A stretch of 64,000 nt of DNA from positions 68,324,001-68,388,000 of the forward strand of contig OX638150.1 of NCBI GenBank assembly GCA_951804945.1. The letters are read 5' to 3'. Below are positions 15,185 to 62,088 of this stretch, piece by piece; positions within the stretch are counted from its first letter, which is position 1; the number at the start of each line of letters is the position of its first letter. A program made the position numbers and the translations under genes. This DNA comes from Podarcis cretensis. Taxonomy: Eukaryota. The notes below the pieces were generated by a model. The model did not search any database. It saw only the letters and a list, made by a program, of their open reading frames with translations, and was not told the origin of the DNA.

Positions 15185-18100
15185 TTAGACATTCCTAGCT
15201 CCATAGCATGGTCCATATCTAATCAGGGAGAGCCTTCCACGACTTTTGCTGGTGAAAGAAAGACAAAGAAGAGTGTGAGGATCCACAAGATGCAAAATTA
15301 TTAAACAGAAGAAATGTACCAGTGAGTAGGATCAACTGAAAAAAAGAGGTCACTTGAAATTGGCAACCATAGGGTGGCCTCCAACTGGACAGGTCTACTA
15401 GTATAAGGACTTTGGAGCTGTGCAATGAAACTTCACCTTATCCTCTCCCCCTACACCATGCGCAACTCCTAAATATGTTCAGGTGGGAGAAGGGAATGAG
15501 AAATTCCACTGTGCAGCCCTAAGTGTTTGTGCTAGCCCAACTGCTTACTTCCCTAAGTTACATTTCCTGTTGGTGACAACACTGGATGAAATTGCTTCAT
15601 TCTCCAAGTTTCATGTTACAAAATTATTTGGATTGCATCTGGCAGTTGTTTTGTTCAGGCAAGGACTTCCACGTGTGCCATGGAACTTCCCTTTCCTCTC
15701 CTTGTGCCCTCCCACCCACTCCAAATTTGGTTTAGAGGATTGAAAGAACACCTACAACAGGTGTGGGGTTCCTCATGCCAGAGTGGGGGTGAGAGGAGAG
15801 AGGGGAAGATCCACTACACAAGCAGAAAACTTGCACAAACATTGGATCCAGCCCTTTGTAAGGGAGCGTTTCTCTTAAATAGGCTACAAATCCTGCACAT
15901 CCTTTTCAGATTGTTCATCATGGGAAAACTGTACTCACACAAAGGCATTGCAGAAGAAGCACTTATTGCTGTATGTCTGGCCATCAGAACCACACATTTG
16001 TTGCAACTCCAGGGTGCAGAAGTTTCTCGGATAGCCTTGGCAATCAACCTGCAGATAGCGAGAGAGCAATAGCACCTTTTCAAGCTTCCTTGCCCACTTA
16101 GCATTAAGCTACACAATGACTTCTTTGAGTGTTATAAATATAAGCACATACATAAATACAGAGTGAGTGAATACCTATGATCATTCACCAAGCATTGTTA
16201 TGCTGTGCCTTACCATTCTGCCAAGAGAGAAGGAGAATTTCAGGGGCAGACGTACGATAAACATATAGTAAGATAGTCCTCCGTGTTTTCAGAAAGCAAG
16301 GGATGTTCTCAGGCTTACGTGCAAAGCCAACTCAATGTAATTTTTAATGTTGAAACCAAAGAAATAAATGTGACCATACCTACACACCCACACAGATGTA
16401 CACCCTGACTAGTTTAAAACCATCAAGCCAAATACTTACCTTTTATTTCCCACCAGAGGACATGCATATTATATGACTGTGCTCTGTTGCAGCTTAAGCT
16501 AGTGTTTGGTTTTATTATAATTTTTAAATTCTTTCATTGTTCCATGATTTTTTTTGCCTTGTTTTATAAGCACTGCTCAGAGATGCAAACAATTAGGAGC
16601 TGTATAAATGCCTTAAGTAAATGAAATAAATGAATAAACTTTACACTGCTCATTTTATTTATCTGTATCTATTTTTTGTTTATGTGTTTCCAGGAATTGA
16701 GGGGGTCTGTTCATTTCAGTTCTCTCTGTTTCTGCTTTCCAATCTTAAAACCAGTTCTTCAGATATTTCTGCTACAATTCATAAGTTTTCTCTCTTTATG
16801 TTCTCCTGGAAGTTTATTACCATTTTGAGGCAGGTTTATTCCAATCATTTTTTATTTTTTTTACAATTGCGTGTCGAGGTCCCCAGGTCCACCCCAATAA
16901 CTCACACATCACACAGAAATTTTTGTTTAAGATTTTTGGCATAATTTTGGCCACAACTTTATTAAAATACAAATTTGTGAGTGGTTGCGTAGGCATTGGT
17001 TGCGACTATCTGCCCCCACCATGGGGGACAGACTGACATTCCGCACGATGCGAAAGTCAGAATAGGGGAATACACTTGGGGGTTACGCGGAGCAGGGAAC
17101 CTGCCCTCACCCCAAAAGCAACCAGGAGCTCATTGCTATGGTCCGAGCCCCCTTGACAGAGTGGACAAGCAATAGTTAGCCCCCAATTCCTTTAATGGAA
17201 TCTCTTGCAGCAGCAGCATTAGAGGGGCAGGCACAGCCAATCCATGCCCCTCAACCAACCAAACCATAAACCAATCCCTAACCGCGAACCTTACAAGTTG
17301 TGACGATTTGCTACGCAGTAGGCAAAAACCAAATGGCCCCAGCCAATCAGCCAGATGGACAAAATTCCTACCAGGCCCCCGCTCCAAAGCAGATGACCCC
17401 ATGACAGGCATAGCAAGGTCAAAGCAAACAACCCTATTCTAGGGAGGGGGGGACGGGCAATCTGATGCACGGGCGAAAAGAGGAAGCCCTAGCCCCGTGC
17501 GAGGAGTTTTAGCATTTCTGACTGTCAATCAATAAATGGCAACATTAACTTCTTCCCAACAACAAGGGAAGCACATCAGTGGCCAACAATCAATTAGCCC
17601 GCTGCCCAACTTTAGAGTGTCCTGGCGGCCCCCACCGCAACACGTGCTCTCCATGAAGGAGAACACGCTTTGTACACGTTTTTGCAAGCACTTTCCCTCG
17701 GTATAATTTGTTTTTTGTATGTTATTTCATTATTTGTTCATTACATTTAGACCCCACCTTTTTGCCCCAAAGAGCTCAAGTTCTTCCCCCCTCATTTTAG
17801 CCTCACAACAACCAGGGTCACCCTGTAAGCTTCATGGCTGAGCACAGAATTGAATTCTGGTCTCCCAGATAGTAGTCCAACACTCAAAAGACTACACCAC
17901 ACTGGCTCTAATATATTATTTTTTATGCACACTTTCCTTTTAATATATGCATTTTTGTAAACGTCTGTTGGCTGGAGGAATGCAGTGCAAAATTTGGATA
18001 TTGTATTTTTACGTTTATAACATGCTCCCGTGTATAAGACAACCCCTATTTTGGGGGACTCAAAATTAAGAAAGTGGGGGGGAGATTGCCCAAAATTGTT

Positions 18101-20860
18101 GACATTTTTTGGGGAAGGATTGCCCATAGTTGTTGAGCTTTTTTTTAGGTGGTATTGCCGAAAATAGCTCACCCGCATGACCTACACTGCCACTCACACG
18201 TGTCGCAAAAGCCACCTTTTGTCTGTCACCTTGCTGGCAGAAGCCGCCAATTGCCCACCCAATTGCCACAGCGACAGCCAATCAACACCAGCCCTTGCCG
18301 CAACCACCAATAACATGCCGTTGACAATCTCCGGCTCGTGGCAGCAACCAATCCTATGCCCCCCCCATGCACTATCCATGTATAAGACAACCCACAATTC
18401 CTAACATACTTTTTACATGGAAAAATACGATATTTGTGAATTTTGAATAATAGCTTTGCTTCAGTTCCACATTGCATCAGAAAGTGCAATGTGACAGTTT
18501 TGCCTTTAAATGCAAACTGAATAGAATTTCTCCCCATCTCTGCTCCCGCGTGATACCAACATTGCCACAGCTTAGCTGGATGGGGCAGGGTGATAAAGAC
18601 CAGCTCACCCATAAGTCAAGGTAAGGTGACCACCTCAGGGGGCAGGTTCCATAGGGGCTGCAGATCCAGCCTCCAAGGAACCTGCAAGGAACAAACCACC
18701 CACCGCTGCTGTGGCAACAACAGCTGTGTGCAGGTAGTTGAAGCCGTTTCCAGGGTGTGTCTGCTGTCATGAAGAGCTGGGTGCAGGGTAGGGATCCCAA
18801 AGGTGGACAAACTGCCCCAGAAGCAGCACAATGTGTCCCAGCTCTTTCCCCCAAAAAGCTCAACAACTTTGGGAAGCTCAGCCAGTTCCCCCAACTTTTT
18901 GCCCGGGCTTTTACTTCTTGAAATATGGCAACCCACTTACACCCCATACTATGCAGTAGTGCATCATGGACACAGCCAGGATTTATGTTAGTGGCCGCAG
19001 GCTTTATGAGCCTCTTGAGCTTGCCGATCAGAAGGTCAGTGTTTCAAATCCCTGCGACGGGGTGAGCTCCCATTTCTCTGTCCCAGCTCCTGCCAACCTA
19101 GCAGTTTGAAAGCACACCAGTGCTCTCTGGTTTCTGTCACAGTGTTTCATTGTGCCAGAAGTGGTTTAGTCATGCTGGCCACATGACTTGGAAAGCTGTC
19201 TGTGGACAAACACCAGCTCCCTCAGCCTGAAAGCGAGATGAGCGCCGCAACCCTATAGTTGCCTTTGACGGGACCTAACCGTCCAGGGGTCCTTTACCCT
19301 TTACCTTTTTACCTATGTTAGTGAGGGGAGAACAAGCTATCTGCGATGTGGTTGGTTGGTTAGTTAGATATTTTTATTTATTTACTTGATTTAGGGGGTG
19401 GATAGCTGCCCTCTCCTGTCCCGTCTTGGCTACACCCATGGAGTGCATAGCTATTATAGCTAGTAGCCATTGGGAGCTTTATCCTTCATGAATTTTATTT
19501 AATGCTCTTGTAAAAGCACCTATGCTGGTGGCTATAACTATCATTTGTTGGATTCAGTCCCATAGTTCAACCACTGAAGAAGCCCTTTCTTTTGTCTCTC
19601 CTGAATCTTCAAAAATTCAGCTTCACTGTATGCCCCAAATTCTAGTGTTATAGCGGGAAAACATTTATCTATTCACTTCTCCCATGCCCTGCGTTATTTG
19701 ATACACCTCTGTCATGTGCCCTCTTTCTCACCATTTTTCCAAACTAAAAAGTTCCATACTGTATATTGTATCCTTTGCTCATAGTAGAGTTGTTCCGACT
19801 GCCTTTGAGCCACAATTCTTACTTAATGCATTTCATTCCCATTTCTAAGCGAATTATTTATCCCTGTTCCGTTCAGGAGCACATTTCCTTCATGGAAATG
19901 AATATGATGATGAGACAGGACCAGATATTTACATTTGCCCCCTGTAAACCTCTCGGATTCAACAGCACACCAGTGCAAGAATTAGTTTAATCCTAAACTT
20001 TGTTTTCATTGTTCTTTACTTACTATTATGTGCTTTAATTCTCCTCTACAGCTACACGATATTGATTGTGTAATCAGAAGAAATAGCTGGCTCTTACCTG
20101 CAGTTGGGGTCTTCTTGCTTCAGCAACAGTATCTACTGTAGAACCAAAACAACAATTTTAAAAGCTTCAAAGCCAAGCCACCTGTTGAACAGCAGTCCAT
20201 TGGGGGACATTTTATTCACCTCTGAAAAATGAGGTGCATTTTCTCTTACCTTTCCTTTACTACTTTGACATGGAATATGCCAAATAACATAACTGATTAA
20301 TAGTTGAAGTGAAAATGAGCAAATAAATTAAGATTCATTATCTGGTTGACAACACAAATGAAAGCTTTCCCCCCATAAATTTGTTCAAATCCCATCGGTT
20401 TGCAACACAATCCTGTCAAACTTCCTCTTGTTGATGCTTAGAACTCCACATAAGTTCTGTTTTTGTGTGTTATGGCAACCTTGTAGAGGCCACCAAAAAT
20501 GTGTGTGTGGTGGCTCCTGGGGTCCTTAATGTTTGCAAGCTATTCATCATGTGGATTGGCATGGAGAGTACCAGGTAACAGTGCCAGGTACCACCAGGAA
20601 TTTGCTGTGCTGTCATTGAGCCTCTCCATGTGGCAGAGTAAATTCTACATGTTAAGCATTTGTATTCCCTGTGGCACTTACATCCAGCTCATGGAATCAT
20701 GGAATTGGTGTGTGTCCCTTTCTGAGATGTGAGTGTATAATGCAACACAAATTTCAAGAGGAAAGTCTCTCCAAAGGTACCTTGGCAGTATGATAGGTGA
20801 CTCACCTGAGTACAGGAAGAAGAGTGTCAGAACAAGAAGCAAAAAACCCAATGTCTTCAT
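15185..20860 (-). CDS. Gene C: ovomucoid-domain-3-like single Kazal inhibitor (4 exons, P1 Leu)
   Basis: Exons 20860-20806, 20132-20098, 16048-15939 and 15248-15185. Protein [87 protein letters not shown]. Six Kazal Cys; AATAAA at 15042-15037. Confidence 0.9.
16935..17680 (-). mobile_element. Probable LTR-element fragment / solo LTR
   Basis: GC-richer block containing GGCCACAACTTTATT (reverse complement of AATAAAGTTGTGGCC), shared with the LTR-like blocks at 29650 and 31620. Confidence 0.5.
17998..18432. mobile_element. Tc1/pogo (Tigger-like) non-autonomous element
   Basis: Ends TATTGTATTTTT... and ...AAAAATACGATA are inverted, with internal GTATAAGAC repeats. Confidence 0.55.
18992..19315 (+). 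mobile_element. Sauria SINE (older, diverged copy)
   Basis: Body homologous to the other copies; ends in an (ACCTTT)n-like tail. Confidence 0.75.
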
Positions 20861-30200: not shown

Positions 30201-30388
30201 AAGAAAACATGTATATACCCATTCAACTCCTAGCTGAACTGAAGCCCATTCTGTTGCTTTCAGTAGGGTGACAGAGCAAATCTCACATGACAAGATATTC
30301 TTTCTCATTCCTACTGACTAATTTCATATAGAAGCTTCCTTGAGAATAGCTACCTCTGAACATTCAAAAGAATATGTGAGGGTTCAAC

Positions 30389-30429: not shown

Positions 30430-30743
30430 TGTGTGCGTGTGTGTGTGTGTGTTTGAGAGATGTGCTTCTCTGTTCCCATGTCCCTGTGTGGGACAACAAT
30501 GCCTCCTTCTTCCACAAGCTTTCACAAATGAAGCACTGAGGTTTGCAGGGAGATTTTATCAGATTCAGTTGACAACCTAATAAGAGCCTTCATACAGTCT
30601 TTGGAACACCTGGACAATTCATGGATTTTGGGTTCCTTTCTGAGATGGAGTATCTAATGGAACATTTGTAATGTGAAATATGACTCACCTGAGCACAAAA
30701 AGAAGAGCATCAGAGTAAGGAGGATAAAGCTGCTTGGCTTCAT
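27234..30743 (-). CDS. Gene D: single Kazal inhibitor (4 exons, P1 Leu)
   Basis: Exons 30743-30689, 29506-29478, 28726-28617 and 27294-27234. Protein [88 protein letters not shown] ~30841-30850; AATAAA 27093-27088. Confidence 0.9.
28320..28585 (+). mobile_element. L1/Tx1 ORF2 C-terminal fragment in intron 3 of gene D
   Basis: [11 protein letters not shown] and AQKWK...EWQLKLTEY resemble the L1 ORF at 2632-3150. Confidence 0.7.
29035..29286 (-). mobile_element. tRNA-derived squamate SINE in intron 2 of gene D
   Basis: Reverse complement begins AGCCAGTGTGGTGTAGTGGTTAAGAGC (A-box) and ends in a (TTC)n tail; a related decayed copy lies at ~17730-17910. Confidence 0.7.
29648..30030 (-). mobile_element. 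LTR-like insertion in intron 1 of gene D
   Basis: Begins TGTGAC; contains GCCACAACTTTATT; intron sequence (GCATTTTATCTTACA) is duplicated on either side. Confidence 0.5.
30390..30452. repeat. (TG)n microsatellite
   Basis: Read directly; other microsatellites at 1133-1155, 6072-6101, 6346-6390 and 58385-58448. Confidence 0.95.
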
Positions 30744-38300: not shown

Positions 38301-38499
38301 CTCCTCAGCCCTTTCCCATCCCAAAGACAAAGAGCAATGATGGCATAAGCTTTCCCACCTATATAGTATTTCTCTTTAAGGAGCTATAATGAAAGCTTCA
38401 TCTTATGAATTCTCATATTTATTTACTTCTTTTTTTCTCATTAGCAAAAGTGGAAGAAAGCTGGAACTGAAATACTATGGAGAATGCAAAAAAGCTTAA
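35341..38499 (+). CDS. Gene E: single Kazal inhibitor (4 exons, P1 Met), inverted relative to the rest of the cluster
   Basis: Exons 35341-35395, 36284-36312, 37041-37150 and 38445-38499. Protein [90 protein letters not shown] ~35227; AATAAA 38647-38652. Confidence 0.92.
37688..38037 (-). mobile_element. Sauria SINE in intron 3 of gene E, TSD AATTAGGGGATA
   Basis: TSD on both sides; the empty site is visible in paralogs G (~55750) and H (~61470). Confidence 0.9.
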
Positions 38500-47967: not shown

Positions 47968-50900
47968 TTAAACTCTTCTGCATTCTCCAAAGTGCATTAG
48001 TATCAGCTGTCTATTCTTTATTCTGATGAGAAAAAAATAAATACGAGAATTCATAACATGTAAGTTTCCTTATAACTCATTAAAGATAAATACTATATAG
48101 GTGGGAAAACTAAGTTCATTATTGCCCTAAGTCCTGGGGAGGGAAGGGGCTATGGAAGAATAATGTCTGAGTCCCTGGAGAGCTTCTGCCATTTGCCTAG
48201 ACAATATCGAACAAGATGGACCAGTGTTCCTTTCAGCTCCACCGCTTGGTGGAAGATCCGTCTTCTCCACCCTTCATTGTTGATCTGTGTCACAGAACAT
48301 AGAACTGATTTGGGCATCTTTCCCCTGCCCTCTCCTCCCACAGGAGCCCACTTAGCAGCAGCAACAACAGTACTGTCAGGAGGGTGGTGCATGTGAATCC
48401 ATTTGAGTTTAAAATTCAAGGCGGTCTACAGATTAGCTCTGCTCACCATGTTCATTTAGGCCTCATATGCAACACATAACCCACATTGTGCAAAAAAAAT
48501 AAAAATTCCTGCATTGCAGGGGTTTGAACTAGATGATCCTTGTGGTCCCTTCCGACTCTACAATTCTATGGTTCTCTCCATTCTGAAGGAAATCAGCCCT
48601 GAGTGCTCACTGGAAGGACAGATCGTGAAGCTGAGGCTCCAATACTTTGGCCACCTCATGAGAAGAGAAGACTCCCTGGAAAAGACCCAGAGGTTGGGAA
48701 AGATGGAGGGCACAAGGAGAAGGGGATGACAGAGGACGAGATGGTTGGACAGTGTTCTCGAAGCTACAAACATGAGTTTGACCAAACTGTGGGAGGCAGT
48801 GGAAGACGGGAGTGCCTGGTGTGCTTGGTCTATGGGGTCACAAAGAGTTGGACACGACTAAACGACAACAAAATGATATACTCACATATATTCATTGCAG
48901 AAGTGACACCGGTTGCTATAGGTCTTGCCATCAGAACCACAGTGGGCATGATACTCCTCAGTGCATATGACTTTTGGGTACCCTTGGCAATATTTCTGAA
49001 GAAAAAGGACACAGCACTTATTAAGGGCTCCTCCCCCCTTAACCTCTGGACTGCAAGGCCTTTCTGACTATGACTTGCCTAATAATGAAGCACAGATAAC
49101 AAATACACCAAGTGTTAATTTAAGATATGCATTCAAGCACAGGAAAAGCTGGTTTATCATCCTGCCAAGCAGTGAATTGCATGATAATGTTGTTCCATAT
49201 TCAACCCAAGTTACCACTTCTTCCAAAGACAGGTTGATGCTCCCAGACATGACGTATGTGTGTGTGTGATTCCTGTATTCAGTTCGTAGGAAGAGAATTT
49301 CAGCTCTGTTTTGCTTTAGTGAGCATTGCTCTTCCCAACTATTAACAGGCTGGAAAGGGGCAGAAAGGTACTCCCATCTGAGGCTCTTCCAGCTCTTGGC
49401 AGTCAGAAGGAAAGCTGGGAACGTGGATTATTTTTTGCCATTTAGACTGTGCCAGCTCCACACAGCAGAGAAGTCCAGTGTTTAGGAGCCTTGGGGATTT
49501 ACTTCCAACCTTGTTATCAGCATGTGTACTGACTGTGTGATGGCCTGGGATTCAGATTTGAATGCTGAACCTGAGGAATCCCAGCCTGCACAGGATTCCC
49601 CGCTTCCAGAACCAGCTGAGCTGGGGCTGGGGCATGAGCCTGAAGGGTCCTCACTTGTGTTGGATCCTCAGGTGCAGGCACCAGCTGAGTCTGCTCTGGC
49701 TCCTGAGGGGATGGAGGACCCATTGCCTGCAGGTGCTCCACCCTCAGCCCCATCAGAGGAAGCTGAGGTTGCCTCTGGGTCCGGTAACCCTCCAGCCTCT
49801 CCTGAGCTGCAGAGGCTCAGGGCAGAGAGGCGGAGGGAACTAAGTTCCCTCAGGAGGAGTGCTCGCCTTCAGGCCAGGAGAGGCAATTCACCTGTGGATT
49901 GGGGCCACCCTATGCCTCGGGGGAGATAAAAGCCAGCCAGCCCCAAGTTGCAGGAGCAACATCGTTGGTTGTCAGTAGCAGCCTGATCCCTGCCCTGCTT
50001 CCATGCCGGAGCTTCTGACCTCACCCGACACCCTGCCCTGCAACCAGCTTCGACTTTTATGGACTGCCTTCATTTTGCACCATTAACCTCGGACTGGACT
50101 CGGACCTCACCTCTCGACTAGTCCCCAGGACCAGCACAGACAGTGTGTGTGCTTTCCTCATGTGGAAATTGCAACCTTCAACTTCCTCCCTTTATTTGTA
50201 CCTCCAGCTGGCACCAATCAAGCCTAGAGTGCCACTCGCACACACTAAACAAAATTCTGGAACCCTTTTTAAAGCTTCAAGGAACTTTTATTTGTTTCTT
50301 AAAGAATATTTTCTTAACGCTATCATAATATTTGGCACTTACCGCTTCCCATGATGCTTTAACAGCAACATCTAGAAGCAAAAGACAGAAAATGTAAAGT
50401 TATAAAGAAAATCCGTATATTGAATAACAGTTCATATTAGAACAGTTATTTCTAGGAACAAAAAATGAGCATTGTATCTTCTACATCCCTAGCCGGAATT
50501 AAGATTCCTGGAAGAAATATCAACAACCTCAGATGTGCAGATAACACAACCTTGATGGCAGAAAGTGAGGAGGAATTAAAGAACCTTTTATTGAAGGTGA
50601 AAGAGGAGAGCACAAAATATGGTCTGAAGCTCAACATCAAAAAAACGAAGATCATGGCCACTCGTCCCATCACCTCCTGGCAAATAGAAGGGGAAGAAAT
50701 GGAGGCAGTGAGAGATTTTACTTTCTTGGGCTCCATGATCACTGCAGATGGTGACAGCAGCCACAAAATTAAAAGACACCTGCTTCTTGGGAGAAAAGCA
50801 ATGACAAACCTAGACAGCATCTTAAAAAGTAGAGACATCACCTTGCCAACAAAGGTCCGTATAGTAAAAGCTATGGTTTTCCCAGTAGTGATGTATGGAA

Positions 50901-52895
50901 GTGAGAGCTGGACCATAAATAAGGCTGATCGCCAAAGAATTGATGCTTTTGAATTATGGTGCTGGAGGAGACTCTTGAGAGTCCCATGGACTGCAAGAAG
51001 ATCAAACGTATCCATTCTTAAGGAAATCAGCCCCGAGTGCTCACTGGAAGGACAGATCGTGAAGCTGAGGCTCCAATACTTTGGCCACCTCATGAGAAGA
51101 GACGACTCCCTGGAAAAGACCCTGATGCTGGGAAAGATGGAGGGCACAAGGAGAAGGGCACAAGGAGATGGTTGGATAGTGTTCTTGAAGCTACCAGCAT
51201 GAGTTTGACCAAACTGCAGGATGCAGTGGAAGACAGAAGTGCCTGGCGTGCTCTGGTCCATGGGGTCACGAAGAGTCGGACACGACTAAACAACAACAGA
51301 CTTCCGGGTTAGCGCCATCGGCAATGGCGGCGTTCCTCTGATTGAGAGGAGTGATAAAAGGAACTTGTGTCCCTCTAAAGGGAGCTTTGTCATATTGTCG
51401 TAAGGATGCAGCTGGGAAATTGCTTTTAAAGATAAAAGCTCTGAGAAACTAGTTTTTGACCTTGGACTGTTTAAGGATGGCGGTTGGGAAGGAAGTCGAG
51501 TGTGAACTGAACAGGACATTTTATCTGTTGGGAAAGCTGCAAGACCAGATAAATGTTATGGCTACCAATGTTGTAATCTTGGGAACAAAAGTGGGCATTA
51601 GTAAAGAAGCTGACAAGAACTTGGCACAGGAACATCTTCCAACTGAACAAATCGAAGAATTTGAGAAGGAGAAACTTGTTGTGATTAAAGTGATGAAAGG
51701 GGGAGCCGTAACCCTACAAAAGCAAATGGTGGATTATAATTCGAGGCCCTACATGATGGCAACCAGGAGGAGCCAGTTTTTGGAGATGGAAGCCTGGCTT
51801 GGTTTGGAAAATGAAAGGATTTGCTGAAATATCTATATGAATTAGAATACAAAGAGGGGAGATGTGAGGAGGTCAAGGAGATAAGTTAAGAAAAGGAGTT
51901 ATATTAAGGTTTAATTTGTTCTTTTGCTTTTTTGGATTTGTATTCTTTTTTCCTTTTTAGCTGTTTTTGCTTTTTTATTTTCCTATTTTTATTTTTCTCT
52001 TGGATATGTTTTGTTTTTATATATTGTGTTTTTCTTTGTAACCTTTTAAAACTTGAATAAATATTATTGAAAAACAACAACAACAACATCTTCTACATCC
52101 TTTGTTATACTGAAAGTGCACCCATAATGTGGCTTGGAAATATGCAATTTACTTTAAATGTCACAGGGCATGGATTTGAAGATAATCAAATCAATGGAAA
52201 ATGGTGTAATCAGTTAAATAGGAATAACTGAATATACTGATTCATTTACTAGCTAACTGGGTACCATTTTTTTAATTTCAGTGGAATACCCAGCTGTGGT
52301 GCCGTGTGTGTTTAGAATTGTTCCCAAGTCTACCATTTATCTTACAAGAGCCATGTAGAGATTGTGAAGGAAGCATGGTGTGTGGTGGTAGTAGCTTTAG
52401 GGGGCATTAATGTTTGAAGTCTCACCTCACAAAGAGGTTCCTATTGGGTGGAAAGTGCTGGGCACTATCAGGAATGAAGAGCCCTGATGGATTGTGAATC
52501 TCACATGGCAAGACATTCATTCTGGTTCTTCCTGACATTCATCATTTCATGTAGGAGGAACCTTGAGAATAGACATGTTTCAGTATTCAAATGAATGTGG
52601 GAAAGGCTCAAGTGTGTGTGTGTGTGTTTTGGGGGGATGTGTGTCCCTATGTTTGACCAATGTCCTCTCCTTCATTTAGCTTTCAGACATCAAATACCAA
52701 GGTATGCAGGGAGATTTTAACTGGATTTAATTAACACAGGTGGAGCCTTCCTACACTCATCTGAATACATGAATAGTCTAGGGTTTGGTCCCTACACCTC
52801 TCCAAGAAAGAGAACTTTTGCAATATGAAATATGACTCACCTGAGTACAAAAAGAAGACCATCAGAGTGAGGAGGAGAAAGCTGCTTGGCTTCAT
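47968..52895 (-). CDS. Gene F: single Kazal inhibitor (4 exons, P1 Glu)
   Basis: Exons 52895-52841, 50371-50343, 48995-48886 and 48022-47968. Protein [82 protein letters not shown]. Splice sites intact; AATAAA near 47810. Confidence 0.9.
48570..48872 (+). mobile_element. BovB 3' fragment in intron 3 of gene F
   Basis: [30 protein letters not shown]; the tail ends ~15 bp from the exon 3 donor. Confidence 0.88.
49536..50138 (+). mobile_element. Solo LTR (TG...CA, ~600 bp) in intron 2 of gene F
   Basis: TGTGATGG...CCAGCACA termini with near-perfect 5-bp TSD GACTG/GACAG; GC-rich. Orientation is tentative. Confidence 0.7.
50490..51298 (+). mobile_element. RTE-BovB LINE, 3' RT portion, in intron 1 of gene F
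   Basis: ORF 50465-51202 [15 protein letters not shown]...[26 protein letters not shown]; outer TSD ATCTTCTACATCC at 50477-50489 and 52088-52100. Confidence 0.92.
51299..52075 (+). mobile_element. Non-autonomous L1-like element inserted into the BovB (CAA)n tail
   Basis: Starts GACTTCCGG...ATGGCGGC; short coiled-coil-like ORF 51456-51827; AATAAA and A-tail; AACAACAAC on both sides. Confidence 0.55.
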
Positions 52896-53837
52896 GATTT
52901 TTCTGGTGGGTTTGGATCTGTTGGCCTCTTAGTGCTTTTCCAAGCAGTAGATGCTTTTCAGATTCCACTGGTTACGATGAGGTATGGCATCTCTTCCATG
53001 TATTTATGGAAGTTTCTGCAGCCTTGATGATGAAATCTCCCAATTTCTGAGAAATATTTACACGTGCAAATGTGATTATACAGGACTGCAATGTTTTCTG
53101 CCAGTTTTAATGGTTCCCCTTAAGTGCACATTCCCTGTGTGTGCAAGAAATATTTGGCAACCAGATCCTTAGGAAATACGGCTTCTGATGCAATGATGAC
53201 ATTGCTGTTACAGGTCACAAAAAATGAGGTACAAACAAAACAGTTTTAGAAATTCTTGGATTCTTTTGACCCAGGCAATCATTTTAGCACAAAGAAAAAC
53301 AAATGAGCCTTACTCGTTCAGCATGTATGTCATAAAATAAAAGAGGTATTGTTGTCCCAGAAAGCAATACAAACACATTATATACGTCAAACACACTTAT
53401 TATCTTTAATTGTTTAAAACCACAGAAGTGGAAAACAAGCATAGAGAAAACAAGATTTGCTTGATAGGAGAAAACAAGCCATGAATGTATGGCGTGAGCA
53501 TCTTGGATTTCCATTGTTTGAGGCCATTTTCTTCTGAATACAAGTTACTGGGAAAACAGCAGGTGGGTCCAGTGTTTTTGCCCTCAGGTCCTGCTTGCAG
53601 GCATCCCATAGGCATCTGGTTGTCAGCTGTGAGAACAGGATGCTGGGACAGAAGAGACATGGGCATGATCCCACATCTTGGCCAATTTTGGAAACAAGAA
53701 GCTGGCAGGAGAAAGTCTGGACCTTGGGTCTGGAGAGTTTGGAGGATTCCAAATCTTGGCAGAGCTATGTCCCACTTTGTCGCTCAAAGGAGCTTCCCCT
53801 GATCCTATGCATTTTTACTCAGCAGTAAGCCTTATGA

Positions 53838-54184
53838 AGGGACGCAGGTGGCGCTGTGGGTTAAAGCCTCAGCGCCTAGGACTTGCCGATCGAAAGGTCG
53901 GCGGTTCGAATCCCTGCGGTGGGGTGCCCAGCGCCTGCCAACCTAGCAGTTCGAAAGCACCTCCAGGTGCAAGTAGATAAATAGGGACCGCTTACCAGCG
54001 GGAAGGTAAATGGCGTTTCCGTGTGCGGCTCTGGCTCGCCAGAGCAGCTTCGTCATGCTGGCCACGTGACCCGGAAGTGTCTCCGGACAGCGCTGGCCCC
54101 TGGCCTCTTAAGTGAGATGGGCGCACAACCCCAGAGTCTGTCAAGACTGGCCCGTACGGGCAGGGGTACCTTTACCTTTACCTT
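53838..54184 (+). mobile_element. Sauria SINE with TSD TAAGCCTTATGAAG
   Basis: TSD on both sides; empty site in the duplicate at ~59888-59901. Confidence 0.92.
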
Positions 54185-55309
54185 AAGCCTTATGAAGTAA
54201 GGATTCTCTTTCAAGGAAGAGTGAATAGGATTGAAGCCTGACACTTTATCAGATGTTTGCACAACATGGGGGTACTTCCTGCCATTCCCTGCCATAAGCA
54301 GATATTCTGATGAGCAGTTGAGTTGCCTTCCAGTGGAAAAGGCTGATGGGCGGACACTATTTTCTCTGCTCTGTTGAGATTTCCTTGTGGAACAATACCT
54401 GTGAAAGTGAGGAGCTCTTCTGCCTTTCTCTCTCACTAAAACAAGATGGTTGCTGCCTCTAAGAGAAGTCCTAATGAACTGGGCAACTGGGCATATGCAG
54501 AACAGGATGATGGATCTGGTGGGCCATTGGCCTGATCCAGCAGCTGCTTCTTACGTTCCCCTTGGGCAGCAGAACGGTCTCCCCTTCCCACTCTCCTCCT
54601 CTGCATAGCCTAACCTGCCCTAGGGATTTCCCAAATCCACCAGAGCAACATAGGCAACACAGTATGAAACCCAGGTGGGGAAAGCAAGGAGGAGAGAAAT
54701 CCCATTGCATTAACATTAAGTCTTCTGATGGCACAATGATGTAGCTGGGTACCCAATTGAATGGCCTATATCAATTATATATTATATCAATTGATTTACT
54801 ATGTGTATTTTTCTCTTATAACTATGTCAGGTGTTTTTTTTTAATTTGCTTCGATTAAAAATCAATAGAAAAGCAAAGAAATGTATCATGGCAAGGGGAT
54901 GGGATTTAGCCTCAGTGTCTAACTAATCACCTTGCTCTCTACAGGTGGTTTTTTTTGGGTTTTTTACTCTGCAGAACTCAATTGCCAGAACTCAGAAATG
55001 TAATAGTCGAAAGGGAGAAGATTCTCCTGATTGTTTGACTCAGTTCCCTGATTGTGCGTTATTAGTAACAAACTTCAAGACCAATCTCTTGCCCAAATCA
55101 TATAATATTTTTAAGAATAGATAATACACAAATAAATATATGGAGAGTTTGATAATGTTGCTGAGCTTATTTATTGATAAACCGAATTAAGATGTTGCAA
55201 GATATTCACTGGCTCACAGAGGATAAGCAAAGAGAAGAATGGATTTATTTTTTTGTGGTGATGCGATGAGTGAATCTTAAAGAGTAATGGGACTTCTTTT
55301 GCAGGTGTT

Positions 55310-58300
55310 TCATAGTCTTGTGCATCTTCCTAAGTATTTCAGTTCCAGCTTTCTTCCACTTTTGCTAATGAGAAAAAAGAAGTAAATAAATATGAGAATT
55401 CATAAGATGCAGCTTTCATTATAACTCCTGAAAGAGAAATACTATATAGGTGGGAAAGCTTAGGCCATCATTGCTCTGTGTCTTGGGGATGGGAAAGGGC
55501 TGAGGAAGAATCCTGTCAGAGACCCTGGAAAACAGCTTCCTGTCAGCCTAGCCAATATTGAGCAAGAGGGACCAATATTCTTTTCAGGTCTACCCTTTGT
55601 GGAAGATTCCCCTTTGCCCGTCTTCATTGTAAATCTGAGTCAAACTACTCCAGGGGTAAACGTTCAGACATTTACCTAGAGCAATTCCAAGATCCACATT
55701 AAGGAAACACCTAGTGTAGGCCTTTGTTACCTTCAGAATAATGTTCTTACTATCCCCTAATTCCCTGATGGCTTTTTTGGTTATTTTTCTTCTGGGCCAA
55801 CCCTACTACTTTTTGCGTTGAGTCTGGCCTGGTGGGATGGCGATAGAGCCCATTTGGGCATATTTCCCCTCCCCGTGCCCCTGGATCACTCTTAGAAGCA
55901 GTAACAAGAGTGTCAGGAGGGTGGTGCATGTGAATAGCCCTCCCAAGCCACTCCATCTTCAAATTCAGGGCTACCAACAAATTAGCTCTGCTCACCATGT
56001 TCCTTTGGGCTCCATAAGCAACACATAACTCAGGAGAGGGGTTTCCCTCCGCTTGACTTTCCCTTCTACATGGGTGCTGATTCTCTTTTTCTTTTCAGTT
56101 CTTTTATTTACATCTCACCATGCTTAGTGAAAATATAATCATGTACTTTTTAACTTCCAACAAAGATGTCTGGGGGGGGGGGAATGATTCCTGCACTCCA
56201 GGAGGTTGGACTACATGACTCTCGGGGTTCCTTCCAACTGCATGATTCTTTGATATACTCACATATATGCATTGCAGAAGAGACACTGGTTTCCATAGGT
56301 CTTGCCATCAGAGCCACAGTGGGGATTAAGCTCCCTGGTGCATACTGGTTTTGGATACCCTTTGCAATATTTCTGAAGATGAAGGACACAACACTTTTAA
56401 ATGTCCTCCCAACTTAACTTTTGGACTGCAAGGCCTTTCTGAATGTGACATGATTAAGAATGAGGCAAAGATGAGGAATGCAAATGACAGTACGCCAAGT
56501 ATTATATTAAGGTGTACATTCAAGCACATGAAATGCTGATTTATCATTCTGGCAAGCAGTGAATTGTGTGATAAAGTTGTTCTTGGGGCATGTGATTTGG
56601 TGACATGGTAAGGCCCCATTGCGGGGGCTGAAACCTGCCAAATTATAGATCATCAGTGCCAGGGATTTCATGCAAGATACCTTAAAGTTTAAAATATTGC
56701 AGGGTTAGAACAGGTACAAAGTTTTTCACGCTGCAAAACAAAAATTGCAAACATGAGAAAATTAATCCTGTCAAATTGCGAGTGGGCAGCTCCAGGGGTT
56801 TCATGCTTGACACATTTAAGAGTGGTTTTTGCAAATAAATACTTCTTTAAGAGAAAAACACAATGAGTGCCTAGATTCATAAGACAGTGGCTAAGTAATA
56901 TGCCTGCAAGGTTGGGTGGTCTGTCTAGTAATAACAGAAAACCCCACTAGGCTACTACAGAACACAGTGGTAGTGCAACTCGTACAGCACATTGGCAACA
57001 AATATTCACACAGGTGTTCAAAAATAATTTTACACCATTTATCAAATATGTGAGACAATTACTTACAAAGTGCCATGAACACTTACAAACTACCTAAAAT
57101 AAAGTGAACTTGCAATATCAGATTTTCTACGTTCTTACAAATTCTTGACTCAGTTTTTCGTTTTTTCTTGTTTTTCAAATAAGTTCAAGGAGATTCAAGA
57201 AAAGGGCAAGTTCAACATTGTTCCCAGTAGCTGTGAGGTGCTGATGAAGCAGCGTATAAGAACGAAGACAGGGTTCCAGCGTTCTATCCCCGTTTTGCCT
57301 TAGCAGTCCATGCAATTGAGAGGCTGCTGTTTCGCCCCCAGTGGGGCCAATTTGTTGGGGTTGGCAGATAGCACACTCCCTGAGCACAGTTTTCTGGGCT
57401 TCTTCAGTTGTCTCATGCCATGTGTCTATTAGTGCTAACTGATAATAATCCAAACGGAATCTTATCAGAATCAACATAATACACTTCTAGGTGTTAAATT
57501 AGATACAAAGTAAATATAATTTCTCCCACTATATAGAAAGAATCAATTTTCATGCAAAAGTTCATAATTATGTACTTACATATCTCTGAAGAGACAATTT
57601 CTTGGCTTAAGCATACAAGACTGAATAGCTTAGCAAGGTAGCCCTGTTTGATTACAGATATATATATACATTCTCTCATTCTAGGTTTTTGAACAGGTGT
57701 TTTACATTAGTAGAGAGGTGAGGTTGTGAAGTAGAGGCTGGACATGATACTATTAATACTTACATCTCATACATTTCACATCCAGATACACATTTCAATA
57801 CCCATTGCTGTAATTAAATGAAAACTGAAAGATCTAATTCGGAATTTAATCCTACTGGCTGTAATGTTTTAATATTCAGGGAGTGTGCTATCCACCAACC
57901 CCAATGAATTGGCCCTGTCTTCTTTATTATACGCTGCTTCATCAGGACCTCACAGCTACTGGGAACAATGCTGAACTTGCCCTTTTCTTGAATCTTCTTG
58001 AACTTATTTGAAAAACAAGAAAATACAAAAAACAGAGTCAAGAATTTGTAAGAACCTAGTAAAATCTGATATTGCAAGTTCACTTTATTTTAGGTAGTTT
58101 GTAAGTTTTCATGGCACTTTATAAGTAATTGTCTCTTTCTCACATATTTGATAAATGGTGTAAAATGATTTTTGAACAACTGTGTGAATATTTGTCGCCA
58201 ACGTGCTGTATGAGTTGCACTATTTTGTTAATGACACAGGTTGCATTTTTCTAGTAGTACGACAAAACACAAGCTGAGACTTTCTTACAAATTGTGGGTA

Positions 58301-58382
58301 GCAACTGGAACTAATAATAATTCCACCGCCTTTTTTTAAAAAAAGGGATGGGACTAGAGATGTGAAACCATGGGGAAAACCC

Positions 58383-58451
<69 letters not shown>

Positions 58452-58575
58452 AATAATTAAAAATTCCACAAGAAATATAAATTCACTTATCTTAACTCCA
58501 TGCTACTTCCATGTTCTATCATAAGAATAAATGATTTCCTACTTACCTCTTCAAATGATGCTTTAACAACAACAT
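55310..58575 (-). pseudogene. Gene G: Kazal inhibitor copy with intact exons 2-4 (P1 Arg) but lacking exon 1 and promoter
   Basis: Exons 58575-58547 (DVVVKASFEE), 56372-56263 ([36 protein letters not shown]) and 55364-55310 ([18 protein letters not shown]). Intron-1 homology stops at ~58757 and no MKPSS-type exon is found before gene H. Confidence 0.8.
56967..58256 (-). mobile_element. Penelope-like element relic with long inverted repeats, in intron 2 of G
   Basis: Inverted repeat ~56971-57273 vs ~57913-58222. Minus frame ends IKTLQPVGLNSELDLSVFI*, resembling a PLE GIY-YIG C-terminus. Imperfect 14-bp TSD TACTACAGAACACA/TACGACAAAACACA; absent from gene E intron 2. Confidence 0.65.
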
Positions 58576-61027
58576 CTAGATGCAAAACACAGAAAATGTG
58601 AAAATTATTTTGCAAATCCATATGCTGCATAATAGTCCATTTGATAACATTTATTTCTAGGAACTGAAAAGTGAGGTGCATTGTATCTTGTACATCCTTT
58701 GTTATCCTAAAAGTGCATCTATAATGTGCCTTGGTAATATGCAATTTCCTTTAAATGGGACAGAAGAGACATGGGCATGATCCACCAGCGATATTTTTAT
58801 GTTCTTCTGATGCTCAGAGTATTCACACAAGGTCACCTTCCCCATTTTTCTGATTCTCTTTGAAGTAGCATTTTGCCATAGATTTAAAGGGGGAAACCCC
58901 CCAAAAAACCCTAGAAATGAATATATGCTAGGATTTTGATTAATTGGGTTATGGATTAAAATACAAGCTGCAGGGCTGTGCCAGACAGAGAATTCCTGGA
59001 CTGTCTTATCCAAACCAGCCTGGTTGGCTTAGCACAGAGCAAACCTGTTAACATGAGAAAAAGTGTTGATGGGCCATCATGGAGGAATCCACGATAGGGA
59101 TGTTAACAAGGTGATGGAGTGTATGTTTAAGGTGACAGGAAAAGGGAGTCTGGAAGCAAAGGATGCTGGGAAGAAGAAGCAGGAGGAAGAGCTGGAATCC
59201 ATCTTGGGAAGGCTGTCTAAAGGCTGACTGAAGGCTGCCTTCGCTGCTGTAGGGTGCAAGTGCCTCTTGAAATGGCCATAATTGTAAGATCTGGACTCCC
59301 TCCATGCAGATTGAAGGTGTATATAGCTTAAGAAATTTGTTTCTTAAAGCCACAACAGTCTCCGTCGCATCCTCAATTCTCCAAAGAAACACAGACCCTG
59401 TGTGGGCGCCTGGGACACCATGGCCTGTTGCCACCACTTGGCTGAGAAAGGGGCAGACACTCGACTTTGGTAACAATATTAATTCTATTGAGATCATAGT
59501 GGTTTGGAAAGATCTTGATACTTCTAAAAAGAAGGATGATGCAACCATCATTCAGCAAAAATATAGAACTAAGGAGTCGCACCTACAATTTTGAGGCGTG
59601 AATTCTGCTTCATCTCCTTCCTAATCACCACAGCATCTCTCTCCAGCCCTTATGCCTTTGCTTATTAGCCACCCATGTATAGTCCACACCAGCATCACCT
59701 CTCCATTCACCACACTAGCAGTTCTCTGCCCAATTTCCCTTATATGTTTGGGTGTGTTTTACATGATACTGAAGAAATCTGGACCTTGGGTTCGGAGAGT
59801 ATTGAGGGTTCCAAATCTTGGCAGAGCTATGTCCCACTTTGTCCCTCAGAGGCACTTCTCCTGATCCTATGCATTTTTACTCCGCAGTAAGCCTTATGAA
59901 GTAAGGATTCTCTTTCAAGGAAGAGCGAATAGGATTGAAGCCTGACACTTTATCAGACATTTGCACAACACGAGGGTACTGTCTTTCCCTGCCATAAGCA
60001 GATATTCTGATGAGCAGTTGAGTTGCCTTTCAGTGGAAAAGGCTGATGGGCGGACACTATTTTCTCTGCTCTGTTGAGATTTCCTTGTGGAACAATACCT
60101 GTGAAAGTGAGGAGCTCTTCTGCTTTTCTCTCTCACTAAAACAAGATGGCTGCTGCCTCTCAGAGATATCCTGAATGAACTTGGCAACTGGGCATATGCA
60201 GAACAGGATGATGGATCTGGTGGGCCATTGGCCTGATCCAGCAGCTGCTTCTTACGTTCCCCTTGTGCAGCAGAATGCTCTCCCCTTCTCTCTCCTCCTC
60301 CTCCTCCTCCTCCTCCTCCTCTGCATAACCTAACCTGCCCTAGGGATTTCCCAAATCCAGCAGAGCAACATAGGTGACACAGTGAGACATCCAGGTGGGG
60401 AAAACAAGGAGGAGAGAAATCCCATTGCATTAACATTAATTCTTGCGCTGGCATAATGATGTAGCTGGGTACCCACTTGAATGGCCTATATCAATTCATA
60501 TAATGGCAACTGAATTTTCAATGTGTACTTTTCTCTTATTTCTCTGTCTGTTTTTTATTTTCTTCTATTAAAAATCAATAGAAAAGAAAAGAAAGGTATT
60601 ATGACAGGGGGGTGGGTCCTAGTCTCGGTGTCTAACTAATCACCTGGCTGTGTACAGGTGTTTTTTTTGGGGGGTGGGGGTTTAATCAGCAGAACTCAAT
60701 TGCCAGAACTCAGAAATGTCATACACGAAAGGGAGAAGATTCTCCTGATTGTTTGACTCAGTTCCCTGATTGTGCGTTATTAGTAACAAACTTCAAGACC
60801 AATCTCTTGCCCAAATCATATAATAATTTTAAGAATAGATAATACACAAATAAATGTATGGAGAGTTTGATAATGTTGCTGAGCTTATTTATTGATAAAC
60901 CGAATTAAGATGTTGCAAGATATTCACTGGCTCACAGAGGATAAGCAAAGAGAAGAATGGATTTATTTTTTTGTGGTGATGCGATGAGTGAATCTTAAAG
61001 AGTAATGGGACTTCTTTTGCAGGTGTT

Positions 61028-62088
61028 TCATAGTCTTGTGCATCTTCCTAAGTATTTCAGTTTCAGCTTTCTTCCACTTTTGCTAATGAGAAAAAAGAAG
61101 TAAATAAATATGAGAATTCATAAGATGCAGCTTTCATTATAACTCCTGAAAGAGAAATACTATATAGGTGGGAAAGCTTAGGCCATCATTGCTCTGTGTC
61201 TTGGGGATGGGAAAGGGCTGAGGAAGAATCCTGTCAGAGACCCTGGAAAACAGCTTCCTGTCAGCCTAGCCAATATTGAGCAAGAGGGACCAATATTCTT
61301 TTCAGGTCTACCCTTTGTGGAAGATTCCCCTTTGCCCGTCTTCATTGTAAATCTGAGTCAAACTACTCCAGGGGTAAACGTTCAGACATTTACCTAGAGC
61401 AATTCCAAGATCCACATTAAGGAAACACCTAGTATAGGCCTTTGTTACCTTCAGAATAATGTTCTTACTATCCCCTAATTCCCTGATGGCTTTTTTGGTT
61501 ATTTTTCTTCTGGGCCAACCCTACTACTTTTTGCGTTGAGTCTGGCCTGGTGGGATGGCGATAGAGCCCATTTGGGCATATTTCCCCTCCCCGTGCCCCT
61601 GGATCACTCTTAGAAGCAGTAACAAGAGTGTCAGGAGGGTGGTGCATGTGAATAGCCCTCCCAAGCCACTCCATCTTCAAATTCAGGGCTACCAACAAAT
61701 TAGCTCTGCTCACCATGTTCCTTTGGGCTCCATAAGCAACACATAACTCAGGAGAGGGGTTTCCCTCCGCTTGACTTTCCCTTCTACATGGGTGCTGATT
61801 CTCTTTTTCTTTTCAGTTCTTTTATTTACATCTCACCATGCTTAGTGAAAATATAATCATGTACTTTTTAACTTCCAACAAAGATGTCTGGGGGGGGGAA
61901 TGATTCCTGCACTCCAGGAGGTTGGACTACATGACTCTCGGGGTTCCTTCCAACTGCATGATTCTTTGATATACTCACATATATGCATTGCAGAAGAGAC
62001 ACTGGTTTCCATAGGTCTTGCCATCAGAGCCACAGTGGGGATTAAGCTCCCTGGTGCATACTGGTTTTGGATACCCTTTGCAATATTT
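61028..62088 (-). CDS. Gene H: exons 3-4 of a Kazal inhibitor (P1 Arg), near-identical duplicate of G; 5' exons beyond the right edge
   Basis: Exons 62088-61979 and 61082-61028: [54 protein letters not shown]. Differs from G by one E>K change in exon 4. Exon 2 is expected at ~64260. Confidence 0.85.

What the first reader, a model, noticed from the sequence alone, without database searches (positions are those of the whole stretch)
15185..62088. Expanded single-domain Kazal inhibitor array with a diversified P1 panel (Leu, Leu, Met, Glu, Arg, Arg)
Six paralogs (C-H) share one scaffold, but their reactive loops differ: NFCTL|ELQQ, PQCTL|ELNP, SICTM|EYQA, VICTE|EYHA and PVCTR|ELNP (twice). P18' is also variable (F, D, F, H, L, L). 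Established: the residue two after Cys II is P1 and sets specificity, and Laskowski showed that contact residues are hypervariable in ovomucoid third domains. Inference: the array is a secreted inhibitor repertoire covering elastase/chymotrypsin/subtilisin-like, Glu-specific and trypsin-like proteases. It may be a lizard defence system of skin, gland or oviduct that encodes as separate genes what birds encode as multidomain ovomucoid/ovoinhibitor. The ORF track shows none of these spliced proteins.
Basis: partly seen in the sequence, partly recalled or inferred. Interest (0 to 1): 0.85.

Follow-up and report, generated by a model that had tools for sequence, protein, structure and literature searches.

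The report
Lizard tandem array of Kazal inhibitors
This lizard window holds a tandem row of small secreted Kazal-type protease-inhibitor genes whose specificity-setting residue differs from gene to gene. Related lizards and snakes already carry the same genes under the automatic name "ovomucoid-like", so this is a tidy example of a known kind, not a new system.

Summary
All six reactive loops lie where stated, and a seventh Kazal gene (B, P1 Arg) lies just outside the range.

- **Gene models:** B to F are complete four-exon genes with canonical splice sites, a hydrophobic leader, six cysteines spaced as in turkey ovomucoid third domain, and a poly(A) signal.
- **G and H:** H runs off the window. 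G is a recent 5.1-kb partial copy of H (97% identical) without exon 1, so the two Arg genes are not two independent genes.
- **Relatives:** B is the SPINK6 ortholog. C has orthologs across squamates. D (Leu), E (Met) and F (Glu) each have orthologs in other lacertids that mostly keep the same P1. Birds also have single-domain relatives, so the contrast with ovomucoid fails.
- **Selection:** the ten literature-defined contact positions evolve about 2.3-2.6 times faster than the scaffold (p=0.0001). Omega above 1 was not shown.
- **Expression:** one spliced contig from a public run matches two predicted F junctions. The tissue is unknown.

Targets, including any Glu-specific protease, remain inference.

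The parts
10100..10157 (-). Gene B (SPINK6 ortholog, P1 Arg) exon 1: start codon and hydrophobic leader, phase-1 donor
   Evidence: ATG plus hydrophobic run and GTAAGT donor. A TATAAAT motif lies 96 nt upstream.
9224..9249 (-). Gene B exon 2 (26 nt)
   Evidence: It is the only AG..GT interval in the intron with the right phase and no stop codon.
8508..8626 (-). Gene B exon 3: Kazal core, Cys I-V, loop CTR|ES
   Evidence: Pfam Kazal_1 E 8e-13. The protein is 73% identical to mammalian SPINK6, and the tree split has 100/99 support.
6976..7024 (-). Gene B exon 4 coding part (Cys VI, stop); AATAAA 160 nt downstream
20806..20860 (-). Gene C (P1 Leu) exon 1
20098..20132 (-). Gene C exon 2 (35 nt; the least certain exon of the set, acceptor 3 nt upstream also possible)
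   Evidence: The product resembles exon 2 of the iguanian orthologs.
15939..16048 (-). Gene C exon 3: Kazal core, loop CTL|EL
   Evidence: Pfam E 3e-12.
15185..15248 (-). Gene C exon 4 coding part, stop at 15185
30689..30743 (-). Gene D (P1 Leu) exon 1
29478..29506 (-). Gene D exon 2 (29 nt)
28617..28726 (-). Gene D exon 3: Kazal core, loop CTL|EL
   Evidence: Pfam E 6e-11. The orthogroup with Zootoca and Podarcis proteins is all P1 Leu.
27234..27294 (-). Gene D exon 4 coding part
35341..35395 (+). Gene E (P1 Met; the only gene on the + strand) exon 1
36284..36312 (+). Gene E exon 2
37041..37150 (+). Gene E exon 3: Kazal core, loop CTM|EY
   Evidence: Pfam E 5e-12. Podarcis orthologs keep P1 Met.
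38445..38499 (+). Gene E exon 4 coding part
52841..52960 (-). Gene F (P1 Glu) exon 1 with 5' UTR; ATG at 52895, donor after 52841
   Evidence: Contigs of runs X6 and X4 end at 52959/52960, and the X6 contig leaves the genome exactly at 52841.
50343..50371 (-). Gene F exon 2
   Evidence: The 29 nt fit the 67 unplaced letters of the spliced contig.
48886..48995 (-). Gene F exon 3: Kazal core, loop CTE|EY
   Evidence: Pfam E 1e-12. The X6 contig piece 48957-48886 ends exactly at the donor. Orthologs in Zootoca and P. muralis keep P1 Glu.
47968..48022 (-). Gene F exon 4 coding part
58547..58575 (-). Copy G exon 2 (no exon 1 exists for G)
56263..56372 (-). Copy G exon 3: Kazal core, loop CTR|EL, identical to H
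55310..55364 (-). Copy G exon 4 coding part (one G/A difference from H, Glu vs Lys)
61979..62088 (-). Gene H exon 3: Kazal core, loop CTR|EL
61028..61082 (-). Gene H exon 4 coding part; exons 1-2 expected beyond base 64000
53672..58755 (-). 5,084-bp inserted partial copy of the H unit (from about 180 nt before exon 2 through the 3' flank), split into the upstream region of F
   Evidence: It is 97.3% identical to 60201-64000. The unsplit target sequence survives at about 45.86 kb and 34.6 kb.
53644..53671 (.). 28-bp direct repeat, left copy, flanking the G insertion
   Evidence: It matches 58756-58783 at 100%.
58756..58783 (.). 28-bp direct repeat, right copy

Best explanation
The window covers part of the squamate SPINK6-region cluster. 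It holds a tandem row of small genes, each with the four-exon layout I recall for SPINK1. Each gene encodes a leader peptide plus one classical Kazal domain of the ovomucoid-third-domain type. B is the conserved SPINK6 ortholog (P1 Arg). C is an old squamate-wide gene (P1 Leu). D, E, F and H belong to a subfamily that multiplied in lacertid lizards and, separately, in snakes.

Each protein most likely acts as a standard-mechanism, substrate-like inhibitor. The loop between Cys II and Cys III docks in the protease active site, and P1 (Leu, Leu, Met, Glu, Arg) chooses the S1 pocket. The panel would then cover elastase/chymotrypsin/subtilisin-like and trypsin-like enzymes. F could cover an acid-specific enzyme or some other unidentified target.

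The P1 identities were mostly fixed before the lacertid genera split, and orthologs have kept them. The secondary contact positions (P5, P4, P3', P18') keep changing. G is a recent partial duplicate of H without its own first exon.

Shown: gene structure, family membership, orthology, faster change at contact sites, and one spliced transcript. Inferred: secretion, inhibition, target classes and tissue.
For: - **Domain identity:** every core exon passes Pfam Kazal_1. Cysteine spacing C-x7-C-x7-C-x10-C-x2-C-x17-C is identical to OMTKY3. The PDB search aligns the exons in register with OMTKY3. The AlphaFold model of the Zootoca F ortholog has pLDDT 87.5 and superposes on OMTKY3 at 0.5-0.7 A over 49 residues.
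- **Gene models:** splice sites are canonical, intron phases are conserved, and a conserved AATAAA lies 140-160 nt after each stop. The models are collinear, without gaps, with RefSeq proteins of 82-84 aa from Zootoca, Lacerta and Podarcis.
- **Orthology:** B joins SPINK6 (100/99). The F orthogroup is all Glu (100/99). The D orthogroup is all Leu (92/95). The E orthogroup is mostly Met (82/83).
- **Contact sites:** they have the highest entropy. Contact codons run 2.3-2.6 times faster (LRT p=0.0001). Between E and G, coding exons are about twice as diverged as intron 3 and the 3' UTR (Fisher p=0.002). Contact nonsynonymous changes number 8 against 2.6 expected (p=0.005).
- **Transcript:** the spliced 331-nt contig in run X6 breaks exactly at the predicted exon 1 and exon 3 donors of F.
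Against: - No inhibition data exist for any member.
- Expression evidence is a single low-depth contig from a run whose RNA status is only a guess. It has 5 mismatches in 119 nt of exon 1, so it comes from an ortholog or allele in a coded organism. Exon 2 and the exon 3 acceptor were not seen directly.
- The leader peptide was judged by eye, without a signal-peptide predictor.
- Omega at contact sites is 0.5-1.2 depending on the model and never significantly above 1. Synonymous differences are also raised there, which could reflect mosaic histories from gene conversion.
- No ortholog of G/H with P1 Arg was recovered.
- G lacks exon 1 and may be dead.
Confidence: 0.78

Rival explanations
1. The array is an arms-race repertoire. 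Continuing diversifying selection, for example from pathogen or parasite proteases, drives rapid turnover of the reactive loops.
For: Contact positions are the most variable ones and evolve 2.3-2.6 times faster. With an equal synonymous rate, omega is 1.19 at contact sites against 0.43 in the scaffold (p=0.0002 for the difference). Between E and G, contact nonsynonymous change exceeds the intron-based neutral expectation (p=0.005). P1 changes 14 times on a 40-row tree. G/H carry a P1 Arg seen in no recovered ortholog.
Against: P1 is mostly conserved within the D, E and F orthogroups and fully within the Phe orthogroup across lacertid genera. Omega at contact sites is not significantly above 1, and it equals the scaffold value once a rate multiplier is allowed. 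Only six paralogous sequences from one genome were available at DNA level.
Confidence: 0.3
2. Some members, above all the Glu-P1 gene F, are not broad protease inhibitors. They would be specialised reproductive, epidermal or oral-gland factors whose role does not depend on matching P1 to a digestive-type protease. Examples are regulators of sperm or egg proteases, kallikrein-like desquamation control as for SPINK6, or venom or oral secretion components.
For: The closest mammalian relative, SPINK6, is described as a skin inhibitor of kallikrein-family proteases (abstract of PMC9976594). Chicken SPINK6 is listed among genes that differ between two keratinocyte populations of scales (PMC8742010). 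Single-Kazal proteins are abundant in snake pancreas (PMC4327157) and occur in Bothriechis venom (PMC3128066). Glu at P1 makes up 6% of Kazal domains in unrelated multi-domain proteins, so it need not signal a Glu-specific target.
Against: No tissue information was obtainable for these genes, because run metadata were coded. The canonical loop (P3 Cys, P2 Thr, P1' Glu, P15' Asn) is fully kept in all copies. That argues for a working inhibitory loop.
Confidence: 0.35
3. Part of the array is non-functional. G, and possibly other copies, would be pseudogenes or unexpressed relics, so the apparent panel is smaller than six.
For: G has no exon 1 or promoter-like region between its exon 2 and the 3' end of H. 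It sits inside a 5.1-kb insertion bounded by 28-bp repeats. A transcript was seen only for an F-like gene.
Against: All reading frames, splice sites and poly(A) signals are intact in B to H. G is only 2.7% diverged from H, so an intact frame says little either way. In Podarcis raffonei and P. muralis, RefSeq isoforms join different exon 1 or exon 1/2 sets to the same exons 3-4. A copy without exon 1 could therefore be reached from an upstream first exon.
Confidence: 0.4

Closest known systems
Squamate RefSeq 'ovomucoid-like' single-domain proteins, e.g. Zootoca vivipara XP_060126949.1, Podarcis muralis XP_077779602.1 (F type), P. muralis XP_028576864 and P. raffonei XP_053233118.1 (D type), P. 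raffonei XP_053233119.1 (E type)
   Same: They have the same length (82-84 aa) and the same exon-junction positions. They are 88-90% identical to the window models D, E and F. The closest D- and F-type orthologs have the same P1 throughout, and most E-type ones do.
   Different: They are automatic annotations with no published study found. The window species differs from them at about 10% of residues, mostly in contact positions and exon 4. The Arg-P1 G/H pair has no counterpart among them. Their Phe-P1 gene (loop CIF|EK) is not in this window.
Mammalian SPINK6 (skin kallikrein inhibitor; solved structure 2N52)
   Same: Gene B shares 73% identity, the loop [10 protein letters not shown] and the longer Cys I-Cys II spacer, and it groups with SPINK6 at 100/99 support. 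C to H are its nearest paralogs.
   Different: C to H have the shorter ovomucoid-type Cys I-Cys II spacing and other P1 residues.
Turkey ovomucoid third domain (OMTKY3) and its P1 variant series, including the Glu18 variant in complex with SGPB (1SGE)
   Same: The cysteine framework is identical. Identity is about 53-55%, and rmsd is 0.5-0.7 A for the modelled F ortholog. The same 12 contact positions apply, ten of them hypervariable (PMC1236909).
   Different: Ovomucoid is one polypeptide of three Kazal domains made in the bird oviduct. Here each domain is its own gene with its own leader, stop codon and poly(A) signal.
Bird single-domain 'ovomucoid-like' / ISK6 proteins (77-82 aa; e.g. Grus, Struthio)
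   Same: They are single-domain, end in a similar exon-4 motif, and have P1 Met or Leu.
   Different: The sampled bird sequences form their own clade, and no multi-copy P1 panel was seen among them.

Membership tests
Kazal-type serine protease inhibitor domain (Pfam PF00050 Kazal_1; MEROPS I1) | Profile match above the curated threshold | tested here: met
   All seven core exons score 42.6-52.3 bits against a cut-off of 21.
Kazal-type serine protease inhibitor domain (Pfam PF00050 Kazal_1; MEROPS I1) | Six cysteines with classical spacing | tested here: met
   C to H have C-x7-C-x7-C-x10-C-x2-C-x17-C, identical to OMTKY3. B has x9 in the first gap, as SPINK6 does.
Kazal-type serine protease inhibitor domain (Pfam PF00050 Kazal_1; MEROPS I1) | Kazal fold (one helix, small beta sheet, canonical loop) | tested here: met
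   This was tested on the Zootoca ortholog of F, not on the window protein itself. The model has pLDDT 87.5, TM 0.89-0.93 and rmsd 0.5-0.7 A to OMTKY3 chains.
Kazal-type serine protease inhibitor domain (Pfam PF00050 Kazal_1; MEROPS I1) | Canonical reactive loop with P3 Cys, P1 two residues after Cys II, and P15' Asn | tested here: met
   The in-register alignment to OMTKY3 shows this. P3 Cys, P2 Thr, P1' Glu and P15' Asn are invariant in C to H.
Kazal-type serine protease inhibitor domain (Pfam PF00050 Kazal_1; MEROPS I1) | Tight-binding inhibition of a serine protease | not testable with these tools
   This needs recombinant protein and enzyme assays.
SPINK6 orthologs (gene B only) | Closest full-length similarity and a supported clade with mammalian SPINK6 | tested here: met
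   B is 73% identical over 77 columns, and the split has 100/99 support.
SPINK6 orthologs (gene B only) | Conserved position in the SPINK cluster | not tested
   The only hint is an unchecked scan note placing an IL-13-like locus 11.8 Mb away on the same piece. No flanking non-Kazal gene lies in the window.
Avian ovomucoid / ovoinhibitor (multi-domain Kazal proteins) | Several Kazal domains in one polypeptide | tested here: not met
   Each unit has its own leader exon, one domain, a stop codon and a poly(A) signal. The database name 'ovomucoid-like' is only a similarity label.
Squamate single-domain 'ovomucoid-like' subfamily | Precursor of about 80 aa with a leader beginning MKP or MKT, one OMTKY3-type domain, and the tree clade | tested here: met
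   C falls in the MKT branch. D to H fall in the MKP branch.

The most novel reading that the evidence does not exclude
A Glu-P1 Kazal inhibitor has been kept for the whole history of lacertid lizards and arose a second time in snakes (Pituophis, Ahaetulla, Liasis). This would imply a real, recurring target with an acid-specific S1 pocket, for example V8-like glutamyl endopeptidases of skin or gut bacteria, or an undescribed squamate protease. In addition, units without a first exon, such as G, may be used as alternative cassettes from a neighbour's first exon. The array would then work partly as one transcription unit with interchangeable inhibitor heads.
Probability: 0.2. Interest if true: 0.6.

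Novelty: new member of a known kind. Interest (0 to 1): 0.35.

Why it matters
The array is a compact natural experiment on how one scaffold is retargeted by a few contact residues. It has five distinct P1 residues in one 55-kb stretch, and each P1 type can be dated by its orthologs. It extends Laskowski's finding of hypervariable contact residues from bird ovomucoid domains to paralogous genes in squamates. It also offers ready-made natural variants, including a Glu-P1 form, for testing sequence-to-reactivity rules. It does not reveal a new kind of system. The genes are already annotated automatically in related species, and multi-gene SPINK clusters with differing P1 residues are, as far as I recall, already known in mammals.

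Tried and rejected
- **Whole-library HMMER search:** the search with G exon 3 listed only multi-domain Kazal proteins among its 150 rows, so it was useless for orthology.
- **Joined models:** exon-sized queries are too short for the length window of the search for homologous proteins. I used the natural 61-aa open frame around F exon 3 by reference, then database proteins. The joined spliced models were never sent to a search, fold or look-up tool. They were built only inside local scripts for alignment, trees and codon counts.
- **The look-up of encoding contigs:** No orthologous DNA, synteny or cross-species dN/dS could be obtained.
- **Reads:** the run search returned mostly small runs that hold only intronic repeats (48388-48978 and 50358-51342, LINE-derived). 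Only one spliced contig and one 5' UTR contig were informative.
- **A paralog 'A':** none was found. The weak hit at 162-188 is not Kazal.
- **Literature:** five searches found no paper on lacertid or squamate single-domain Kazal arrays.
- **Earlier scan notes:** no note on Kazal genes exists in this genome.
- **Complex prediction:** not run. I claim no specific pair, and docking would not distinguish P1 specificity.
- **Codon models:** they gave no support for omega above 1.
Full report
**Observation.** Six-frame translation finds the six quoted loops at the quoted places. A looser cysteine pattern adds a seventh Kazal core at 8508-8626 on the minus strand. A permissive tblastn scan with all seven cores finds no more, and a weak hit at the window start is not Kazal. 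All seven core exons pass the Pfam Kazal_1 threshold, with E 6e-11 to 6e-14. The best solved relative is turkey ovomucoid third domain. It aligns without gaps, so the residue two after Cys II sits in the Leu18 (P1) column. The stated P18' residues (F, D, F, H, L, L) are correct.

**Gene models.** Each core exon has an AG acceptor in phase 0 and a GTGAGT or GTAAGT donor after two bases of a codon.
- Downstream, a short last exon supplies the third base, about 17 residues with Cys VI, and a stop.
- A conserved AATAAA lies 140-160 nt after the stop.
- Upstream, B to F have a 55-58 nt first exon with ATG, a hydrophobic run and a phase-1 donor. They also have a 26-35 nt second exon that restores the frame.
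- This matches the four-exon layout I recall for SPINK1 (from memory, not tested).
- The products are 82-87 aa with cysteine spacing identical to OMTKY3.
- E is the only gene on the plus strand.
- Joined models were built only in local scripts. Searches used single exons or open frames by reference, and the joined-model search step was left out.

**G and H.** The two units are 97.3% identical over 3.8 kb. Exon 3 is identical, and exon 4 differs by one base. H exons 1-2 would lie beyond base 64000.
- G has exons 2-4, but no exon-1-like sequence lies between its exon 2 and the 3' end of H.
- The G segment (53672-58755) is bounded by a perfect 28-bp direct repeat. It splits a sequence that is continuous upstream of E (about 34.6 kb) and in a solitary copy at about 45.86 kb.
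- G is therefore a young partial duplicate of H, inserted upstream of F.

**Relatives.** The 61-aa open frame around F exon 3 found 'ovomucoid-like' proteins of Zootoca vivipara, Podarcis muralis and the snake Pituophis, all with Glu at P1. Searches with those database proteins and their alignment found the family in several groups:
- lacertids: Zootoca, Lacerta agilis, and Podarcis muralis, raffonei and lilfordi;
- many snakes, iguanians, geckos and a cordylid;
- the next relatives, which are bird single-domain 'ovomucoid-like/ISK6' proteins and mammalian SPINK6.

The lizard proteins are collinear with my models, which supports the splice junctions independently.

**Trees.**

| Window gene | P1 | Grouping | Support |
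|---|---|---|---|
| B | Arg | mammalian SPINK6, 73% identity | 100/99 |
| C | Leu | iguanian, gecko and python genes; P1 Leu except the gecko (His) | 98/91 |
| D | Leu | Zootoca and Podarcis orthologs, all Leu | 92/95 |
| E | Met | lacertid orthologs, Met except Lacerta (Leu) | 82/83 |
| F | Glu | Zootoca and P. muralis orthologs, all Glu | 100/99 |
| G/H | Arg | no ortholog recovered | - |

- A Phe-P1 orthogroup present in four lacertids is absent from the window.
- The snake Glu-P1 genes sit among snake sequences, so Glu at P1 probably arose twice. Support is moderate, and gene conversion could mislead the tree.
- Glu at P1 is not rare among Kazal domains in general (16 of 261). Within this vertebrate subfamily it was seen in squamates and one fish.

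**Selection.** The 12 contact positions, and the ten hypervariable ones among them, are defined in the literature (PMC1236909).
- *Entropy:* in 40 squamate domains, contact positions have mean entropy 2.21 against 1.21 for the scaffold (p=0.003). In the lacertid E-H clade the five most variable sites are P18', P3', P1, P4 and P5 (p=0.0045).
- *Fixed-sites codon model, six window paralogs:* the ten contact codons evolve 2.3-2.6 times faster (p=0.0001). With an equal synonymous rate, omega is 1.19 against 0.43 (difference p=0.0002, not above 1, p=0.59). With a free rate multiplier the two omegas are equal, about 0.5-0.6.
- *E against G:* coding exons are about twice as diverged as intron 3, the end of intron 1 and the 3' UTR (Fisher p=0.002). 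Contact nonsynonymous changes number 8 against 2.6 expected from intron 3 (p=0.005). This pair was chosen after seeing the data.
- *Reading:* contact residues change fast, positive selection is plausible but unproven, and P1 itself is mostly stable within orthogroups.

**Expression.** No run on record as RNA holds gene F, and most matching runs hold only intronic LINE-derived repeats.
- One 331-nt contig in run X6 lies on 52959-52841 and then on 48957-48886. It breaks exactly at my exon 1 and exon 3 donors.
- The 67 unplaced letters equal exon 2 plus the first 38 nt of exon 3.
- Its mismatches fit neither E nor D, so it comes from an F-type ortholog or allele.
- A second contig (X4) also ends at 52960, which suggests the transcript start.
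- Tissue is unknown because run metadata were coded.

**Structure.** The Zootoca F ortholog models at pLDDT 87.5 and superposes on OMTKY3 chains at 0.5-0.7 A. The matches include the Glu18 variant bound to SGPB.

**Context from papers.**
- SPINK6 is described as a skin inhibitor of kallikrein-family proteases (abstract of PMC9976594).
- Chicken SPINK6 is listed among genes that differ between two scale keratinocyte populations (PMC8742010).
- Single-Kazal proteins are abundant in snake pancreas (PMC4327157) and occur in Bothriechis venom (PMC3128066).
- From memory, unverified: Komiyama et al. (1991) reported that an OMTKY3 Glu18 variant strongly inhibits the Glu-specific S. griseus protease.

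**Isoforms.** P. raffonei and P. muralis RefSeq isoforms share exons 3-4 but carry a different exon 1 or exon 1/2. First exons of one unit can therefore be joined to the Kazal exons of another, which leaves open that G is used.

**Verdict.** This is a real and correctly read array that belongs to a known kind already annotated in relatives.

Noticed in passing
window 56971-57273 and 57913-58222 (again at 62687-62989 and 63629-63938): A pair of 300-bp inverted repeats, 92.6% alike and about 650 bp apart, sits in intron 2 of both G and H. The segment is absent from E at the same spot. It looks like a non-autonomous DNA transposon with terminal inverted repeats, inserted before the G/H duplication.
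   Followed up: partly
window 43348-44274 (+) and 50465-51202 (+): Reverse-transcriptase (RVT_1) fragments of LINE elements. One lies between E and F in an AT-skewed stretch. The other lies in F intron 1, where public runs pile up at very high depth.
   Followed up: partly
window 53837-54184, with copies at 22955-23319, 42874-43238 and 37686-38037: A roughly 350-bp interspersed repeat, 92% alike between three copies and probably a SINE. One copy was inserted into the 3' flank of G after the G/H duplication, because H lacks it.
   Followed up: no
window 35200-35500 versus 52740-53035: Exon 1 plus the proximal promoter of E and F are 94.7% identical, whereas their first introns are only about 74% alike. 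This suggests gene conversion or strong constraint on the promoter and leader.
   Followed up: partly
window 30375-30452: A (TG)n-type microsatellite lies just downstream of D exon 1, in intron 1. It reads as a Cys-Val run in one frame and gives a false cysteine-pattern hit.
   Followed up: no
proteins P0158, P0277, P0279, P0281, P0282 (Podarcis raffonei and P. muralis): RefSeq isoforms X1-X3 of the Phe-P1 gene have identical exons 3-4 but a different exon 1 or exon 1/2. This implies alternative first exons taken from neighbouring units of the array.
   Followed up: partly
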